A stretch of 61,059 bases of DNA from Octopus bimaculoides (GCF_001194135.2 NC_068986.1:46671752-46732810), one strand, 5' to 3'. Positions 31,008 through 58,811 are shown, numbered from the stretch's first letter. The notes: generated from the sequence alone by a model not told the origin. Translations and numbers: made by a program.

Positions 31008-31042
31008 AAATATATGTGAGTATGTGTGTGTATATATGTATT

Positions 31043-31320
31043 AATAAATTATAGGGCAGCAACAAAAATTTTAGAAATTTTATTTACCACCAGTGGTCTA
31101 GCGAGAATAAAAATCAGTCAATAGGCTATATATTATTCATTTAAAATACAGAGATGCCTATAACAGGACATCTGACCCGCTAGAAAGAGCAGCAAAAGAC
31201 TACATACCACAAAAATAGGGATAATTTCGAAATTATCCTTATTTTTGTGGTATGTAGTCTTTTGTTGCTCTTTCTAGCGGGTCAGATGTCCTATTATAGG
31301 CATCTCTGTATTTTCAATGA

Positions 31321-31322
<2 letters not shown>
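31043..31322. repeat. Foldback fragment of the 466-nt hammerhead repeat family
   Basis: 94-bp arms (31135-31228 / 31229-31322, 4 mismatches) with no spacer, centred on TTCGAA; sequence matches 58558-58757. Confidence 0.92.
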
Positions 31323-31351
<29 letters not shown>

Positions 31352-31369: not shown

Positions 31370-32850
31370 CCCCATTTTTTAGGAGGAGCTCACCACAAGA
31401 CACACATCAGGGGTTCCATTCATTTCCCAGCTCAAAGAGGCGAGCCATGTTCTATACTCAGGTCAAGGCGTAGAATGCAACGCCCGATATCAGCAGCGGG
31501 GCCCGACAGCATCCGCTAGTTTACCCCCGCCGCATCATGCAACATCAATTTCACTCATCCAGCCACAAACACTCTCCAAGATTTCCTATCATTTGTAAAC
31601 TACCTTGCCTCTCTCACTCCTACACCTCTAACCACTAAAGCTTTCCTCATTTCATCCATCCACACAAACCGAGGTCTGCCTCTGGTTCTGCTGCTTACCA
31701 CTTCTGCCTTCATCATCTTCCTTACCATCCGCTCCTCATCCATTCTCTTCAGTCGACCAAATCTCATCAACATTCGTCTTTTCTGAAACAACTGACTCTC
31801 CTGTAATTTCTCTATTTTTCCCACCATTTGGGCTCTCCTACTAAAGAATCTAGCATTTACCTCTCTCACCACATCATCCATATATAAATTAAACAGCCAA
31901 GGAGACATCACATAACCATGTCTTAACCCCATACTTACATCAAACCACTTACTTCGCCATCCACCCTAACGCACGCCCTACATTCTCTATAAAAATTTTA
32001 CAACACTCAACAATCTACCTTCTACTTCATGCAATCGCAACACATGTTACACTGCATCTATGTCTACACGGTCATATACCCTCTGTAGGTCTATAAAGGT
32101 CTAATACACCTCCCTCCTTTTTGCCCAAAACTTCTCACACATTGCCTTACAACAAATATTTGATCTGCACACCCACTTCCTCTCATAAAACCGCACTGTT
32201 CCTCCCCTAGTACACTCTCTGCCTGGTTCTTTACCCATACAGTTTACCAACCACACACAACAGACTTGTACCCCTAAAATTTCCAAACTCACACTTATCC
32301 CCATCCCCCTTGCACAGTGACACTATACAGGCACTGCACCAGTCCTTTGGTACTCTTCCAGCCATATTACAACCATTCACAAGTGCCACTAACCATTCAA
32401 TCACTGTTACTCCTCCTTTCTTTAAGCATTCTACTGTACACACATCTATATCTGGCACCCTCCGATTTGCAATCTTCCACAAGGATTCCTTCACCTTCTC
32501 CCTTCCAATTGCACCATAGTTCCATTCCCCAACAACAGGCATTCTTCTCTTTCCTCCCACAGCCACCATACTTGCCTCCCTAACATCCTCCACATTTAAC
32601 AGCTCACTAAAATACTCTGCCCATCTCCTTTGTGCACCCTCACTTCCTTTCAGCAAATTTCCATTTACATCTTTCATCCTTTCTTCCCTTCTACCAACCC
32701 TCCTTGTTACAGTCTGTACCTCTTTCCAAAACATCTTTTTATTTTTTACAAAATGTTCACTCAACTTTTTCCCGAACCTTTTACTCGCCTCTAATTTCGC
32801 CACCCTCACCACTCTCTTTAATCTCCGCTCCACATCTCTTTAGCGATCAT
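31370..32850 (-). mobile_element. RTE-clade LINE, 5'-truncated and internally deleted
   Basis: ORF 32231-32833 (KKMFWKEV...RRWAEYFSELLN...VPKDWCSACIVSLCKG...NFRGTSLLCVVGKLYG), then GLRHGYVMSPWLFNLYMDDVVRE...SQLF fused to the C-terminal RGRPRFVWMD and a 3' UTR. Confidence 0.93.
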
Positions 32851-42274: not shown

Positions 42275-43040
42275 ATATAAATACAGTGTACATTTAAACA
42301 CATAAGATGTATCCGTCATATGATTCCTTGTACGCTAGAATGAACAGCTAAAATCCAAACCACTATTTAGGAATAAACGTCGAAGGGAATGAAAAATAAA
42401 AACATTTACCATCTATCTCCTTTTAGCAGGTCCTTCTAGCGTGCAAGGAATCCTATGACGGATACCTCTTATGTGTTTAAATGTACACTGTATTTATATG
42501 AATAATATATAGTCTATTGACTAAATTTTTTTACACGCTAGGCCATTGGTAGTAGAAATTTCTAATATTTCTTATCTTGATATTATTAATTATTGATAAT
42601 TTTTTCAGGAAAATTTTCGATTGAAAAAGCCGGCATTTTTATTTACTACCGACAAGGAGCTGTGCTTGCGCGGTAGATTTGAAAAATTAGAACGTTAAAA
42701 TTAGAATGTTAAAAATTAGAATGAAAAATTAGAATTAGAAGCACGGGGCATATGCTGGATTGCCTCGTACTTATATGTTTAATCTAGGTGTACCTGCAGA
42801 CGAAGACATCGTCTGACAAATTATTTTACTTGCTAAAAAATGTCTGAAACCATGGTCCAGGAGATAAATGGTAAATGTTTTTATTTTTCATTTCCTTCGA
42901 AGTTTATCCCTAAATAGTGGTCTGGATTTTAGGTGTTCCTTCTAGCCTGCAAGGAATCCCATGACGGATACCTCTTATGTGTTTAAACGTACAGTGTATT
43001 TACATGAATAATATAGTCTATTGACTAAATTTTTTTACAC
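42275..43040 (+). mobile_element. Hammerhead-bearing repeat (retrozyme-like): ~506-nt period plus 5' inverted arm
   Basis: Direct repeat 42421-42535 ~ 42927-43037; inverted arm 42275-42421; related to 58116-58757; internal (AAAATTAGAA..)x4 expansion at 42682-42738. Confidence 0.82.
42793..42861 (+). ncRNA. Type I hammerhead ribozyme with one core substitution (U4A)
   Basis: CCTG-CAGACGA-AGACA...TGTCT-GAAA-C-CATG-GTC-CAGG. Confidence 0.78.
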
Positions 43041-54725: not shown

Positions 54726-56507
54726 TGTGTGTAAAAGTAAGATCCAAGTATCAAGATGTAGGAAGGTAGTAAGCTTCGGGCAGTCTATAGAAGGTATAAA
54801 AAACAACTTTCAGGAATAATAGTGGTTTATTGACTTAGAAGGTTATAAATTTTTCCCATATCGAAGTTCGATAAGCTGAAAAAAGTTGTTATAGTTCACG
54901 GTTAGCAGCTGGGGTTGCTGTGTATTTTCCCTCTACTCTCCCACATCTCTTTTTTTTTTATTCGTGTTCTTATTCTTTTCCTCAACAAATTTAGACATTT
55001 ATCCACTCCCATATATTATTTCTTCACAAATATATTTTCCCTTTTGTTCTCTCACTCTGTGCTTTCCACGCATTTTCGATCAAAATCTCCTGCAAGTTAA
55101 TGTGGGATTCTTTGACGACAATATTGCATTCATTTGACTTAGGTATCTTTGGCCCCTTGTATGGGTAATCACTATCTCCGAGGTTCTGCTAGCAAAGAAA
55201 CATATGTAGCCTAGATTTAAAATATTCCGTTCCCTAATTTTGCGTGTCTCTCTCTCTCTCTCTCTNNNNNNNNNNNNNNNNNNNNNNNNNNNNNNNNNNN
55301 NNNNNNNNNNNNNNNNNNNNNNNNNNNNNNNNNNNNNNNNNNNNNNNNNNNNTATATAATAGAGTCAATGTTATCTTCGCAAATATTTTCTCCTGAAATA
55401 TCTGCTCCGTATTGAAACTATTTTCACACTCGTGGCCGCCATGATTCGGCACAAAATGAATCCTTTGCTGCGCAGACTTCAGCGTGATTGTGGCTTTCCA
55501 TCATGGTAACGCGTGCTGAGGAAGGTGAGGTTATAATGCCAGTCTAAAAACCGGTCCACGTGAGTCCAAATACTTGAATGTATGTTGAGAGATTGTCCTA
55601 GCCCGTTTGCCAGCAGACGGCTGATTTCTGCAGTATTTATCAGTGTTTTTTTTTTCGGTGATTGAAAACAGAGTTTTGACTTCTAATCCTTCAGCTATAT
55701 TGTATACATATGTATGCATGTGTCCATATGTATACATGTACCCATACGTATGAATATATGTATACATGCATCTAAAAATGTATTTACACGTTTCTGCACA
55801 TACACATGTACATATTTATACTTGTATGAAATGCTTGCATATATATGCAATTGTTATATGATATACTTCTTAAATCATTCACATATATTCACGATGCTTT
55901 CAATAGATTATGACTGTAATCTATAATTAGCCATGTCACTTCCGGTTTTATGAAACCGAGTTTCCCAAGATTGGTGCTAAAGTTCCTCAGTAAATATAGA
56001 TATAAATCTAAAGTTGTAAACCAGGTTGAACAGATTTCTCATTTGCTTAGCATTGATAGATGTGTGCATGTGTTTCTGTGTGTGTCTGTTTGTCCCTCTG
56101 TCTGTGTGCCAGTGAGTGTTCATATGAGTTCACAGATTGATGATGAACATTGATTACTCAAGTGTTTCAATAAAGTTGAACAATAAGTACAATCCAGTGT
56201 ACAGTTTTATTCAGTAATTCCTACAGAAATATCTCTGCTGATTAAGTAACATCCGACTCACCAATGGATAAACACATTTATATTTGATAAAGAAAACAAA
56301 AACCTATCTTGGATGCTAGCATGGCTTACTGGCTTTCTTTCAAATACGTCCAATGATGTTTATTCTAAAATACGAGAATTTAGGTCAACATGAACTAATT
56401 GACCTTCAAAGAACGATATTAGTTCAATAGTTCAATAATCAAAGCACGCAAATACAAAAGGTTCTGTGCAATAAAATGATACTATTAAAATATCGGATAT
56501 TTTAATG

Positions 56508-56844
56508 ATATTTGAAATGCCAGTAAACAAGTGTGCTATCTCGCGTCCAACAGAATTTCATCGTTTTTTATTTAATTAATCTTATAATTGATTATTTTTT
56601 TACCATTTGGATTAGAAATAGACGAAATTGTATACCGGGTATAATTATATATATATGTCTACCGTTCAGCCTTGGGTATACATAGCTAGCTAGCTAGATA
56701 GATAAATAGATACATACATACATACATACATACATACTTACATACATATATGCATACATACACACATATGTACATATGTATGCTCATATATACATATATA
56801 CATACTTACAAACATAGATACAAACGTACATATATGTGTATGGG

Positions 56845-56893
<49 letters not shown>

Positions 56894-57390
56894 GATGTAT
56901 GTATGTATGTATGTGTGTATGTGTGTATGTATGTAAGTATGTATATGCGCGTGTGAATGTATAAATAATATGGGTGGCTAATTCGCAATTTTACAACCTA
57001 AAGGTAGAAGTATATACGTCAATAGAGTGACAAAGGACACTAATCAGCACCAGTATTGCTAGAAATAAAAGCCAAAACAACTCAGCAGCCACAGAAACAC
57101 TATCTTAATGTCTGACAAAGGAGGCAATATATCTACGGCTGCAGATATAGCCAGATCATCGATGATTTTGTATGTTGATACTAACGCATCTCAATACTCA
57201 TCTTAATGACTGACAAGGGAGGCAAGGTCCCTAGTGATAGTTTATTAATATTTGAAATGCCAGTAAACAAGTAAGCTGTCTAGCGTATAACAGAATTTCG
57301 TCGTTTTTATTTAATTAATTTTATAATTGATTATTCTTTGACCATTGAGATTAGACATGGAAGTAGTGGTATGTCTGCCATAATTATATA
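56508..57390 (+). repeat. ~140-bp direct repeat Y (56508-56650 and 57248-57390)
   Basis: ATATTTGAAATGCCAGTAAACAAGT...ATAATTGATTATT...ATAATTATATATA occurs twice, each copy ending in (TA)n. Confidence 0.85.
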
Positions 57391-57830
57391 TATATATATC
57401 TTAATGACTGGCAAAGGAGGCAATCTCTCCACGGCCGCAGATACAGCCAGATCATCGATGATTTCGCATTTTGATGCTCACGCATCTTAATGCTCATCAG
57501 TGGCTCGCACCGCACCTTGGGTTAAACTCAGCTCACCTTGTCAGCTTATAAGATTTCCCTTGAAATTACACGCTGATTGCATAAACGGTTAAAGTGAAAA
57601 TTATAAATGATATGGGTGGTTAATTCACAATTCTACATTAAGATGCATTAGCATCAAAATGCGAAATCATCGATTTAACTATATCTGCGGCCGTGAGGCG
57701 TTTTGCCTCCCTTGTCAGTCACTAAGATAGTGCTTTTGTGGCTATTGAGTTGTTTTAACTCTTATTTCTAGCAATACTGGTACTTATTAGTGCCCTTTGT
57801 CACTTTAGTGATGTATATATTTCTGGCATT
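56960..57830 (-). mobile_element. Rearranged cluster of a ~346-nt hammerhead-bearing repeat (retrozyme-like family H1)
   Basis: Copies at 56960-57203 (decayed HHR), 57399-57637 (intact HHR) and an inverted partial copy at 57636-57830. Confidence 0.82.
57445..57505 (-). ncRNA. Intact type I hammerhead ribozyme
   Basis: AGCCA-CTGATGA-GCAT taag ATGC gtga GCAT caaa ATGC-GAAA-TCATCGATGA-TC-TGGCT; all core residues present; predicted AUC cleavage between 57450 and 57449. Confidence 0.9.
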
Positions 57831-58115
57831 TTATATATANNNNNNNNNNNNNNNNNNNNNNNNNNNNNNNNNNNNNNNNNNNNNNNNNNNNNNNNNNNNN
57901 NNNNNNNNNNNNNNNNNNNNNNNNNNNNNNNNNNNNNNNNNNNNNNNNNNNNNNNNNNNNNNNNNNNNNNNNNNNNNNNNNNNNNNNNNNNNNNNNNNNN
58001 NNNNNNNNNNNNNNNNNNNNNNNNNNNNNNNNNNNNNNNNNNNNNNNNNNNNNNNNNNNNNNNNNNNNNNNNNNNNNNNNNNNNNNNNNNNNNNNNNNNN
58101 NNNNNNNNNNNNNNN

Positions 58116-58757
58116 GTATAGAGTTTTTTGCTGCTCTTTCTAGCGGGTTAGATGTCTTATTATAGGCATCTCTATATTTTAAATGAATAATATATATGTA
58201 GTCTATTGAGTAATTTTTTATTCTCGCTGGACCACTGGTGGTAAATTAAATTTCTAAAATTTCTTTTCCTTCCCTATGATTAATAATGATATTATATTTT
58301 TTGGCTAATTTCTGAAAGAAAATCGGCATTTATTTTACATTTACTGCCGATTAGTTAATGCGCACATGCGTGGTTAAGTCTTGAGAAATTAAGCATGTAA
58401 ACTGGAGTCAGGTTCTTTCCTTGGCTCGTGTTTACACGCTAATCCGGCACTCTGCTGACGAAAGCGCCCGAGTTAGATATACTTTTATCTTACTAAATAG
58501 CTTGAAACCATGGTACAGAGTATAGACTGGTAAAAATGTTTTTATTTTTCATTCTCCTTCGAAATTATCCCTATTTTTGTGGTATAGAGTTTTTTGCTGC
58601 TCTTTCTAGCGGGTTAGATGTCCTATTATAGGCAACTCTATATTTTAAATGAATAATATATATGTAGTCTATTGACAAATTTTTTATTCTCGCTGGACCA
58701 CTGGTGGTAAATTAAATTTCTAAAATTTCTTTTGCTGCCCTATGATTAATAATGATA
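58116..58757 (+). mobile_element. 466-nt tandem hammerhead-bearing repeat (retrozyme-like family H2), about 1.4 units visible between gaps
   Basis: 58116-58290 repeated at 58582-58757 with near identity; begins at an N gap, ends in (TA)n. Confidence 0.85.
58449..58521 (+). ncRNA. Intact type I hammerhead ribozyme
   Basis: ACTCTG-CTGACGA-AAGC...GCTT-GAAA-C-CATG-GTA-CAGAGT; 6-bp stem I; predicted GUA cleavage after 58515. Confidence 0.88.
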
Positions 58758-58760
58758 TGT

Positions 58761-58811
<51 letters not shown>

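What the first reader, a model, noticed from the sequence alone, without database searches (positions are those of the whole stretch)
57399..57637. Intact type I hammerhead ribozyme inside a ~346-nt repeat unit (family H1)
The minus strand folds into a complete HHR. Stem I is AGCCA/TGGCT and the CUGAUGA box is perfect. Stem II is GCAT/ATGC, extended past a 4x4 internal loop by ATGC/GCAT closed by a GUGA (GNRA) loop. GAAA is followed by a perfectly palindromic stem III, ATCATCGATGAT, and an AUC cleavage triplet. Joining overlapping local copies gives a monomer of about 346 nt (158 nt cleavage-to-Z plus 188 nt Z-to-cleavage, a mosaic estimate). A decayed sister (57149-57203) keeps stem II paired as GTAT/ATAC. 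Established: 170-400-nt tandem repeats with type I HHRs (non-LTR retrozymes) produce circular RNAs in other metazoans. Inference: this is a cephalopod retrozyme family, and the palindromic stem III may allow cleavage as a dimer.
Basis: partly seen in the sequence, partly recalled or inferred. Interest (0 to 1): 0.92.

Follow-up and report, generated by a model that had tools for sequence, protein, structure and literature searches.

The report
Hammerhead ribozyme in a short retroelement
The window really contains a complete self-cleaving hammerhead ribozyme motif, carried by a small non-coding mobile element inserted in the way Penelope-like retrotransposons insert; this is a new example of a well-known kind of animal repeat, and neither a tandem array nor ribozyme activity has been shown.

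Summary
On the minus strand (57514->57436) every invariant hammerhead core base is present: CUGAUGA, G10.1-C11.1, GAAA, A15.1-U16.1 and C17. Helices I, II and III surround the core in type I order. A strict descriptor finds two such motifs in the window, against 0.007 expected per shuffled window.

Three details need correcting. Helix II is 5 bp + a 2x2 A/A loop + 5 bp + GUGA, and it arose from a 16-nt tandem duplication. Rfam scores the motif only 22.5 bits, below threshold. There is no 346-nt tandem array here.

The locus holds:
- one copy slightly longer than a unit, whose first 36 nt recur at its 3' end;
- a 98-nt internal duplicate whose ribozyme is dead;
- a later 172-nt insertion;
- a head-to-head inverted 5'-truncated copy;
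- microsatellite flanks.

That layout is the published insertion signature of Penelope-like elements (PLEs). My best reading is a small non-autonomous hammerhead element (a non-LTR retrozyme or PLE derivative) mobilised by PLE machinery, with one intact ribozyme that probably works best as a dimer.

Tandem organisation, circular RNA, cleavage and genome-wide conservation remain untested. A cephalopod origin is only weakly supported. I rate it a new member of a known kind, of modest interest.

The parts
57436..57514 (-). Complete type I hammerhead ribozyme motif (H1 copy A). Distal stem I 57514-57510 / 57440-57436; proximal stem I AGCCA 57505-57501 / UGGCU 57449-57445; CUGAUGA 57500-57494; helix II 57493-57466; GAAA 57465-57462; helix III palindrome AUCAUCGAUGAU 57462-57451; C17 at 57450. 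Predicted cleavage lies between 57450 and 57449.
   Evidence: Sequence; descriptor scan and shuffles; Rfam HH9 alignment, 22.5 bits; folding.
57465..57496 (-). Tandem duplication of a 16-nt unit (UGAGCAUYAARAUGCG x2). It turns a canonical 4-bp helix II with a tetraloop into a helix of about 12 bp while keeping CUGA|UGA and G|AAA in register. It is present in all three local copies.
   Evidence: TRF: period 16, 2.0 copies, 87% matches; alignment of copies. The ancestral form is an inference.
57602..57637 (-). 36-nt segment at the 5' end of the sense copy (C'). It recurs at 56960-56995, beyond the 3' end.
   Evidence: the repeat finder D3: 89% identity, spacing 642; local alignment.
57499..57601 (-). 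Unique leader (Z) between the 36-nt segment and the part of the element that is repeated locally. Its 3' end already carries stem I (57514-57501) and the first two bases of the CUGAUGA box (57500-57499).
57398..57423 (-). 26-nt motif (m) ending unit A. The copy at 57200-57225 is probably the other half of a target-site duplication made by the 172-nt insertion. A third copy at 57102-57127 ends unit B.
   Evidence: the repeat finder D2: three copies, 92% identity, spacing 98 and 198.
57226..57397 (+). Later insertion (B') of an unrelated repeat of about 160 nt with a (TA)7 end. It splits unit A from unit B. A second copy of this repeat lies at 56496-56656.
   Evidence: blastn: 83% identity over 161 nt; flanking 26-nt direct repeats. 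That it is an insertion is an inference.
57101..57202 (-). Unit B, a 98-102-nt internal duplicate of unit A (86% identity) that begins inside the core, after CUGAU. GAAA has become AAAA and there is no CUGAUGA. Helix II pairing is mostly kept (one compensatory C:G to U:A, one G:C to G:U, one broken pair). The helix III palindrome, the cleavage triplet and UGGCU are intact.
57006..57100 (-). 3' body (X) of the element. It is shared with the inverted copy.
   Evidence: blastn and the repeat finder I1: 82-86% identity; alignment.
56960..56995 (-). 36-nt terminal redundancy after X plus 10 nt, repeating the start of the unit. Read as a PLE-type 'tail', or as the start of a next unit. The alternative is that it is one half of a 36-bp target-site duplication.
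   Evidence: D3; definition of the tail in PMC8557442 and PMC11167929.
57638..57824 (+). Inverted 5'-truncated H1 copy, abutting the sense copy head to head. It starts inside helix II (CAUUAAGAUGC...). It lacks CUGAUGA, has a 3-nt deletion in helix III, and stem I 3' is mutated (UAACU). It runs through X and then into (TA)n and the N gap at 57840.
   Evidence: (I1-I6).
56683..56944 (.). Compound (ATAC/GTAT/TA)n microsatellite flanking the insertion on the left. The right flank is TATATATA followed by the gap.
   Evidence: TRF.

Best explanation
H1 is a small non-coding retroelement that carries a hammerhead ribozyme. Its inferred unit is about 346 nt at 41% GC. It is of the kind called a metazoan non-LTR retrozyme, and current work regards these as non-autonomous derivatives of Penelope-like elements (PLEs).

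Shown:
- one sequence-intact type I hammerhead on the minus strand;
- one sense copy whose first 36 nt recur after its 3' end, so the copy is slightly longer than a unit;
- a 98-nt internal duplicate whose ribozyme is dead;
- a 172-nt insertion flanked by a 26-nt duplication;
- a head-to-head inverted 5'-truncated copy;
- microsatellite flanks.

Inferred mechanism: a multimeric or circular H1 RNA was copied by a PLE-type reverse transcriptase and GIY-YIG endonuclease at a (TA)n-rich target. This left a unit plus a 'tail' and an inverted truncated partner.

In the RNA, the ribozyme would cut after C17 (57450). It would do so preferentially when two copies pair their 12-nt palindromes into one long helix III (a double hammerhead), because the lone monomer prefers a fold that sequesters the GAUGA core. 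[quoted passage not shown]

At this locus the element is an old, damaged insertion. Only one of three ribozyme copies is intact, and its activity is untested.
For: - Motif is complete and non-random: (2 hits against 0.007 expected).
- Features beyond the descriptor: G10.1-C11.1, a 10-bp helix II, a 12-nt perfect palindrome at helix III and an extended helix I with an internal loop.
- The dimer fold is favoured by about 9 kcal/mol over two monomers and is exactly the double hammerhead.
- The repeat map comes from two methods: the 36-nt terminal redundancy (D3), the inverted 5'-truncated copy (I1-I6), the 98-nt duplicate (D1) and the 26-nt direct repeats around B' (D2).
- There is no ORF in the unit.
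- The published PLE insertion signature is 5' truncation, partial tandems, an adjacent inverted 5'-truncated copy, an optional 30-40-bp element-derived tail and a (TA)n/microsatellite target bias (PMC8557442 section 6; PMC11167929).
- Published retrozyme features are a type I HHR, 150-450-bp units, GC <45-50%, no LTR/PBS/PPT and co-occurrence with PLEs (PMC7229834). A link between retrozymes and PLE pLTRs is proposed in bioRxiv 10.64898/2026.07.22.740005.
- A second hammerhead-bearing family 1 kb away (H2) shows the same head-to-head and longer-than-unit architecture at three loci in the window, and has compensatory changes in helices I and II.
- 6 of 7 visible ends of these loci lie within 60 nt of a microsatellite, against 13% of window positions.
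Against: - Only one locus of H1 is available. Nothing related was found outside the window.
- No tandem array is present.
- The 346-nt unit is a join of pieces from damaged copies.
- The 36-nt repeat could be a target-site duplication rather than a tail. In that case the unit length is undefined and the copy could be a 5'-truncated end of a longer element.
- The mosaic monomer is not unusually self-paired as a circle (z = -0.2), unlike described retrozyme circRNAs.
- Three-copy covariation is not significant (113 of 500 shuffles as high).
- The Rfam score is far below threshold.
- The monomer's minimum-free-energy fold is inactive.
- No PLE RT/EN ORF was found in the ORFs tested in the window.
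- There are no expression or cleavage data.
Confidence: 0.6

Rival explanations
1. The H1 copies are 5'-truncated 3'-terminal (pLTR/UTR) fragments of an autonomous Penelope-like element, not a dedicated small non-autonomous family. The 36-nt repeats would be a target-site duplication flanking one truncated insertion placed next to an older truncated copy.
For: - The PLE-type architecture and microsatellite target.
- The ribozyme shares PLE-variant traits: a short proximal helix I (5 bp), a long helix II and a palindromic helix III (PMC4209133).
- That paper reports that most PLE hammerheads are dispersed single motifs from truncated copies, with pairs 100-700 bp apart on opposite strands. This locus looks the same.
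Against: - If the 36-nt segment belongs to the element, the template repeats every 346 nt and has no room for an ORF.
- No RT/EN coding sequence adjoins any copy.
- Helix III is a full 12-nt palindrome rather than missing.
Confidence: 0.2
2. A true tandem non-LTR retrozyme array once stood here, or still does. It has been broken by microsatellite expansion, an insertion and the collapse or misassembly of a short-read draft (N gaps at 57840-58115 and beyond). On this reading the locus is a degraded piece of a classic satellite-like array.
For: - The unit-plus-36-nt structure is what the edge of an array looks like.
- The window has 14 N gaps, and one gap abuts the inverted copy.
- PMC8557442 notes that such structures break WGS assemblies.
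- The neighbouring H2 family shows 1.4 tandem units at 96% identity.
Against: - Beyond the 36-nt segment the sequence runs into a 262-nt microsatellite and then an unrelated repeat. It does not run into Z and the HHR.
- The head-to-head inverted partner is not a feature of satellite-type arrays.
- TRF finds no long-period array.
Confidence: 0.1
3. The motif is a sequence fossil or a coincidence inside an ordinary repeat. It has no ribozyme activity and no role in the element's life cycle.
For: - The two sister copies lost the core.
- The Rfam score is sub-threshold.
- The inactive alternative fold is more stable in the monomer.
- At 0.007 descriptor hits per 61 kb, a genome of gigabase size would hold hundreds of chance hits (extrapolated).
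Against: - Two descriptor hits lie within 1 kb, both inside repeats with the same transposon architecture.
- Features not required by the descriptor are present (G10.1-C11.1, long paired helix II, perfect palindrome, extended helix I).
- The 16-nt duplication kept the core in register.
- There is one compensatory change in the sister copy and three in the H2 paralogue.
Confidence: 0.08

Closest known systems
Metazoan non-LTR retrozymes (Cervera and de la Pena 2020, PMC7229834; coral, mussel, axolotl)
   Same: Type I hammerhead; non-coding unit of a few hundred nt (346 nt inferred, published range 150-450); low GC (41%); no LTR, PBS or PPT; a palindromic helix III that allows dimeric cleavage; expected co-occurrence with PLEs.
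   Different: No tandem array at this locus. Helix II is about 12 bp instead of 4 bp, so the canonical loop 1-loop 2 contact geometry is not evident. The mosaic monomer is not unusually self-paired. No circRNA evidence.
Hammerhead variants in pseudo-LTRs of Penelope-like elements (Cervera and de la Pena 2014, PMC4209133; Lunse, Weinberg and Breaker 2017, cited from PMC7761336)
   Same: Short proximal helix I, enlarged helix II, G10.1-C11.1, a palindromic helix III region implying dimers, dispersed single copies and pairs on opposite strands. The locus has the PLE insertion architecture (PMC8557442).
   Different: [quoted passage not shown] Helix III is a full 12-nt palindrome (4 bp plus tetraloop as a monomer) rather than absent. 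No RT/GIY-YIG ORF is attached.
Newt/salamander satellite 2 hammerhead (Epstein and Gall 1987; Forster et al. 1988, as cited in PMC4209133 and PMC7229834)
   Same: Unit of about 330 nt, type I hammerhead, and activity expected mainly as a double hammerhead through a palindromic helix III.
   Different: The newt helix III is 1 bp plus a palindromic tetraloop and the repeats form huge tandem arrays. Here the palindrome is 12 nt and the copy is solitary.
Schistosoma Sm-alpha SINE-like repeats with hammerheads (Ferbeyre et al. 1998, cited in PMC4209133; details from my own knowledge)
   Same: A short non-autonomous retroposon-like repeat that carries an active type I hammerhead and occurs as dispersed copies as well as arrays.
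   Different: The Schistosoma ribozyme has a canonical 4-bp helix II and defined loop-loop contacts. There is no sequence similarity.
Rfam Hammerhead_HH9 (RF02275), intronic amniote hammerhead
   Same: Best-scoring Rfam model. It has the same type I layout, with a two-part helix I interrupted by an internal loop.
   Different: 22.5 bits against a gathering score of 52. There is a 16-nt extra insert in helix II. The context is a repeat, not a conserved intron. Not a member.

Membership tests
Hammerhead ribozyme, type I | Conserved core C3 U4 G5 A6 N7 G8 A9 ... G12 A13 A14, A15.1-U16.1 pair, H17 not G | tested here: met
   CUGAUGA 57500-57494, GAAA 57465-57462, U 57451, C 57450.
Hammerhead ribozyme, type I | Three helices around the core, with helix I open (5' and 3' ends leave through helix I) | tested here: met
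   Helix I AGCCA/UGGCU plus a distal 5 bp; helix II hairpin; helix III hairpin or palindrome. With the core held unpaired, ViennaRNA returns this fold at -29.3 kcal/mol.
Hammerhead ribozyme, type I | Reaches the Rfam gathering score for a hammerhead model | tested here: not met
   No hit at gathering scores. Best is HH9 at 22.5 bits against 52. The 16-nt helix II insert costs score.
Hammerhead ribozyme, type I | Site-specific self-cleavage 3' of H17 | not testable with these tools
   Needs in vitro transcription and PAGE.
Metazoan non-LTR retrozyme | Head-to-tail tandem repeats (dimers to multimers) of a 150-450-bp unit, each with a type I HHR | tested here: not met
   TRF and blastn find no long-period array. 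There is only one unit plus 36 nt. The rest of the genome is not available.
Metazoan non-LTR retrozyme | Non-coding, low GC (<45-50%), no LTR/PBS/PPT | tested here: met
   GC 0.41. No ORF within the unit apart from a stop-free stretch of 68 codons on the + strand at 57284-57487. PBS and PPT were not searched for specifically.
Metazoan non-LTR retrozyme | Monomer RNA predicted to be highly self-paired | tested here: not met
   Circular MFE -83.3 kcal/mol, z = -0.2 against 200 dinucleotide shuffles. Caveat: the sequence is a mosaic of decayed copies.
Metazoan non-LTR retrozyme | Expressed as linear and circular RNAs of unit length | not testable with these tools
   No transcriptome data are available.
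PLE-type insertion (Penelope-like element machinery) | Inverted 5'-truncated copy immediately adjacent to the 5' end of the sense copy | tested here: met
   The + strand copy at 57638-57824 abuts the minus-strand copy that starts at 57637.
PLE-type insertion (Penelope-like element machinery) | Optional 30-40-bp element-derived tail at one end, or a partial tandem | tested here: inconclusive
   The 36-nt segment at 56960-56995 repeats the unit start at 57602-57637 (89% identity). It could equally be a 36-bp target-site duplication.
PLE-type insertion (Penelope-like element machinery) | Insertion into (TA)n or other microsatellites | tested here: met
   Microsatellite 56683-56944 on the left and TATATATA plus the gap on the right. 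6 of 7 ends of H1 and H2 loci lie within 60 nt of a microsatellite, against a 13% background.
PLE-type insertion (Penelope-like element machinery) | RT plus GIY-YIG endonuclease ORF between pseudo-LTRs (autonomous element) | tested here: not met
   No ORF in or next to H1. Pfam scans of 20 window ORFs gave only a weak RVT_1 hit at 31603-31965, in a decayed retrotransposon fragment whose neighbouring ORF (32231-32833) looks LINE-like by eye. This is consistent with a non-autonomous element.
PLE minimal hammerhead (min-HHR) | [quoted passage not shown] | tested here: not met
   A9 is followed directly by G10.1, which pairs with C11.1. Helix III is a 12-nt palindrome.

The most novel reading that the evidence does not exclude
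H1 is a living cephalopod retrozyme family. It would have a unit of about 346 nt that is transcribed, cut by an obligately dimeric hammerhead whose helix II was lengthened by an in-register 16-nt duplication, circularised, and re-inserted by Penelope-like RT/EN. That would leave unit-plus-tail copies with inverted partners. It would give direct structural evidence, in a mollusc, that retrozymes use PLE machinery.
Probability: 0.2. Interest if true: 0.45.

Novelty: new member of a known kind. Interest (0 to 1): 0.3.

Why it matters
Hammerhead-bearing repeats are a known and abundant class in animal genomes, so one more family is not a surprise. I found no paper in the searchable library that describes hammerheads in cephalopods.

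The useful point is architectural. A small hammerhead element of about 346 nt with no ORF shows the insertion scars described for Penelope-like elements: an inverted 5'-truncated partner, a 36-nt terminal redundancy and microsatellite targets. A second family beside it shows the same scars.

If this holds genome-wide, it supports the recent proposal that animal retrozymes are non-autonomous PLE derivatives. That proposal was made for vertebrates, and this locus would add an invertebrate with a testable pair of families. The helix II duplication is a small, clean example of how a ribozyme helix can grow without disturbing the core.

Tried and rejected
1. Relatives outside the window. An exact 20-mer scan of JGI metagenome contigs (AAATCATCGATGATCTGGCT) gave 3 loci. 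All are chance matches in unrelated, mostly GC-rich sequence with no hammerhead upstream. No eukaryotic genome collection is searchable by DNA with these tools.

2. Source organism. Exact-protein look-ups of two window ORFs found nothing on record. One homology search with the LINE-like ORF 32231-32833 gave its most identical relative in Octopus bimaculoides (67%). The other hits were about 50% identical, mostly unnamed metagenome sequences plus one mantis shrimp protein. This is suggestive only.

3. A PLE ORF in the window. Pfam scans of 20 ORFs gave only a weak RVT_1 hit in a decayed retrotransposon fragment at 31.6 kb. I did not scan all six frames.

4. Homology between H1 and the neighbouring H2 unit. 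The best local alignment scores 24, against 21 +/- 2.5 for shuffles, so it is not significant.

5. A remnant of Z after the left microsatellite, which would indicate a second tandem unit. The alignment is no better than about 5% of shuffles, so I rejected it.

6. A rod-like or highly paired circular fold of the 346-nt mosaic. z = -0.2, so it is not supported.

7. Covariation among the three local copies. There are too few sequences: 2 compensatory pairs, and 113 of 500 shuffles do as well.

8. Cephalopod hammerheads in the literature. There is no mention in the main text or the held supplement of PMC7229834, PMC4209133 has no held supplement, and PMC5785218 is not held.

Full report
**1. What is in the sequence**

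The minus strand 57517->57427 reads AGGUGCGGUGCG-AGCCA-CUGAUGA-GCAUUAAGAUGCGUGAGCAUCAAAAUGC-GAAA-UCAUCGAUGA-UC-UGGCU-GUAUCUGCGGCC. All invariant hammerhead positions are present.

| Element | Coordinates (minus strand) |
|---|---|
| Distal stem I, UGCGG / CUGCG | 57514-57510 / 57440-57436 |
| Proximal stem I, AGCCA / UGGCU | 57505-57501 / 57449-57445 |
| C3-A9, CUGAUGA | 57500-57494 |
| Helix II (G10.1-C11.1 closes it) | 57493-57466 |
| G12-A15.1, GAAA | 57465-57462 |
| Helix III palindrome AUCAUCGAUGAU | 57462-57451 |
| U16.1, C17 | 57451, 57450 |

- The ends of the motif leave through helix I, so the topology is type I. Cleavage would fall between 57450 and 57449.
- Helix I has 5 proximal pairs. 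After a G.G pair and a 3x3 loop, it can continue into the 5-bp distal stem, which is how the Rfam HH9 model aligns it.
- Helix III is the 12-nt perfect palindrome. As a monomer it can form 4 bp plus a UCGA loop.

**2. More than chance?**

- A descriptor of my own requires CUGANGA, helix II >=4 bp, GAAA, A15.1-U16.1, H17 and helix I >=5 bp. It finds two hits in the 61-kb window, against a mean of 0.007 per dinucleotide-shuffled window (2 of 300 shuffles with one hit, none with two).
- The second hit is a different repeat 1 kb away (section 7).
- Rfam gives no hit at gathering thresholds. With permissive filters the best match is Hammerhead_HH9 at 22.5 bits (threshold 52), E = 0.0013 in a 181-nt search and 0.011 in a 1.5-kb search. 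The alignment is correct over all helices and the core, and it loses score on a 16-nt insert in helix II.

**3. A detail that explains the odd helix II**

TRF reports a 2.0-copy tandem repeat of period 16 at 57465-57496. On the RNA strand this is UGAGCAUUAAGAUGCG|UGAGCAUCAAAAUGCG. One unit alone would give CUGA-UGA GCAU UAAG AUGC G-AAA, which is a canonical 4-bp helix II with a tetraloop. The duplication kept both halves of the core in register. Because each unit is itself palindromic, the two units pair with each other into a long helix. All three local copies carry both units, so the duplication predates them. The ancestral form is an inference.

**4. Monomer or dimer**

- The unconstrained fold of the monomer pairs the core's GAUGA with UCAUC of helix III. 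It scores -32.8 kcal/mol, against -29.3 for the hammerhead fold in a 91-nt context.
- Two copies co-folded give -63.3 kcal/mol, against 2 x -27.0. The structure is exactly the double hammerhead, with a 12-bp intermolecular helix III and swapped helices I.
It matches what is established for newt and axolotl repeats and for PLE variants (PMC4209133, PMC7229834). Activity itself was not tested.

**5. The repeat map**

blastn and the repeat finder agree. In the sense of the ribozyme (minus strand, coordinates descending) the order is:

| Segment | Coordinates | Notes |
|---|---|---|
| C' (36 nt) | 57637-57602 | Start of the sense copy |
| Z | 57601-57499 | Unique leader; its 3' end carries stem I |
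| Unit A | to 57397 | Intact ribozyme; ends in 26-nt motif m (57423-57398) |
| B' | 57397-57226 | (TA)7 plus a ~160-nt unrelated repeat; a second copy lies at 56496-56656 |
| Second m | 57225-57200 | Probable target-site duplication |
| Unit B | 57202-57101 | 86% identical to unit A |
| X | 57100-57006 | 3' body |
| Spacer | 57005-56996 | 10 nt |
| C (36 nt) | 56995-56960 | 89% identical to C' |
| Microsatellite | 56944-56683 | 262 nt |

On the other strand, abutting 57637 head to head, an inverted copy runs 57638-57824. It continues into TATATATA and then the N gap at 57840.

- Removing B' and one m makes units A and B contiguous with a 98-nt period. I therefore read B' as a later insertion with a 26-bp target-site duplication, and unit B as a 98-nt internal duplicate that begins after CUGAU.
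- Unit B has AAAA instead of GAAA and no CUGAUGA box. The inverted copy starts inside helix II, has a 3-nt deletion in helix III and has a mutated stem I. Only one of the three ribozyme copies is therefore intact.
- Unit B keeps helix II with one compensatory change (C:G to U:A), one G:C to G:U change and one broken pair. With three sequences this is not significant.

**6. The 346-nt unit, and what kind of insertion this is**

- No 346-nt unit is seen twice, and TRF finds no long-period array.
- What is seen is one unit whose first 36 nt recur after its 3' end, plus an inverted 5'-truncated partner, all embedded in microsatellite.
- This matches the published description of PLE insertions. [quoted passage not shown] The tail is element-derived and is explained by two internal start sites for reverse transcription (PMC11167929).
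- Non-LTR retrozymes are defined as non-coding, low-GC tandem units of 150-450 bp with type I hammerheads, and PLEs are suspected of mobilising them (PMC7229834). A 2026 preprint argues from vertebrate data that they are PLE pLTR derivatives, and finds that the share of solitary monomer copies varies from 0 to 1 among retrozyme families.
- H1 fits that combined picture. It is a small non-autonomous hammerhead element, here as an old, damaged, slightly longer-than-unit insertion.
- The main uncertainty is whether the 36-nt repeat is a tail or the start of a next unit (which defines the 346-nt period), or a 36-bp target-site duplication. In the second case the copy could be the truncated end of a longer PLE. 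One locus cannot decide this.

**7. Context: a second family (H2)**

- At 58449-58521 on the + strand: ACUCUG-CUGACGA-AAGC...(34 nt)...GCUU-GAAA-CCAUGG-UA-CAGAGU. Helix III is again palindromic (ACCAUGGU).
- It sits in a direct repeat of period 466 nt. 58116-58297 matches 58582-58764 at 96%.
- Related copies lie at 31010-31335, where two inverted arms both start at H2 position 58558. Others lie at 42333-43034, where there is an inverted fragment plus more than one unit with a period of about 506 nt.
- The 42.8-kb paralogue has CAGACGA (U4 to A). It keeps helices I and II through three compensatory pair changes at 78% overall identity.
- No Rfam hammerhead model matches H2, even at E <= 10.
- H1 and H2 are not detectably similar.
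- 6 of 7 visible ends of the H1 and H2 loci lie within 60 nt of a perfect microsatellite of at least 20 nt, against 13% of window positions (a rough count).

**8. Checks that found no support**

- The mosaic monomer folded as a circle is no more stable than shuffles (z = -0.2).
- No relatives were found in JGI metagenome contigs.
- No PLE ORF was found among the window ORFs tested.
- The organism is not established. The window is a gapped, AT-rich draft with 14 N runs. One LINE-like ORF has its most identical relative in Octopus bimaculoides at 67%.

**9. Verdict**

- This is a new member of a known kind. It is not a new kind of system, and it has not been shown to be active or tandem.
- Interest is modest. 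The PLE-type scars on a 346-nt hammerhead element, and the in-register helix II duplication, are the points worth following up genome-wide.

Noticed in passing
58449-58521 (+); repeat 58116-58297 ~ 58582-58764: A second complete hammerhead-like motif (H2): ACUCUG/CAGAGU stem I, CUGACGA, a 42-nt helix II arm closed by AAGC/GCUU, GAAA, a palindromic helix III ACCAUGGU and a UA cleavage site (58515/58516). It lies in a direct repeat of period 466 nt whose overlapping parts are 96% identical, bounded by N gaps and a (TA)n(CA)n(TCTA)n microsatellite. No Rfam hammerhead model matches it, even at E <= 10.
   Followed up: partly
42333-43034 and 31010-31335: Other H2-family loci. At 42.8 kb a paralogous motif (42792-42861) has CAGACGA (U4 to A), yet it keeps helices I and II through three compensatory pair changes. 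That locus has an inverted fragment plus more than one unit in tandem (period about 506 nt). At 31.2 kb two inverted arms meet head to head, and both start at the same H2 position (58558). Both loci are flanked by microsatellites.
   Followed up: partly
57226-57397 and 56496-56656: An unrelated short repeat of about 160 nt (83% identity between the two copies). Each copy ends in (TA)n on the + strand. The copy inside H1 is flanked by 26-nt direct repeats, which looks like a long target-site duplication. It has no ORF and its family was not identified.
   Followed up: partly
31603-32839 (-): A decayed retrotransposon, probably a LINE. It comprises a 200-aa ORF (32231-32833) with a LINE-like sequence upstream of the RT domain, and a weak Pfam RVT_1 hit (E = 2.8e-4) at 31603-31965. 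Its most identical database relative is an uncharacterised Octopus bimaculoides protein (67%). The H2-like inverted pair at 31010-31335 lies just downstream and may interrupt it.
   Followed up: partly
whole window: The window is a gapped draft assembly with 14 runs of N (10-747 nt), about 20-39% GC per 2-kb bin, and many (TA)n, (CA)n and (TATC)n microsatellites. Several listed 'ORFs' of more than 100 aa are artefacts that run through N gaps or microsatellites. Sub-threshold Rfam 'miRNA' matches at 56700-56965 are microsatellite artefacts.
   Followed up: yes
57154/57153 (-): The dead sister copy keeps an intact helix III palindrome, AUC triplet and UGGCU. On one transcript the single intact core (copy A) could, in a double-hammerhead pairing, cut at the sister's site 296 nt downstream. 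This is pure inference from the pairing rules.
   Followed up: no
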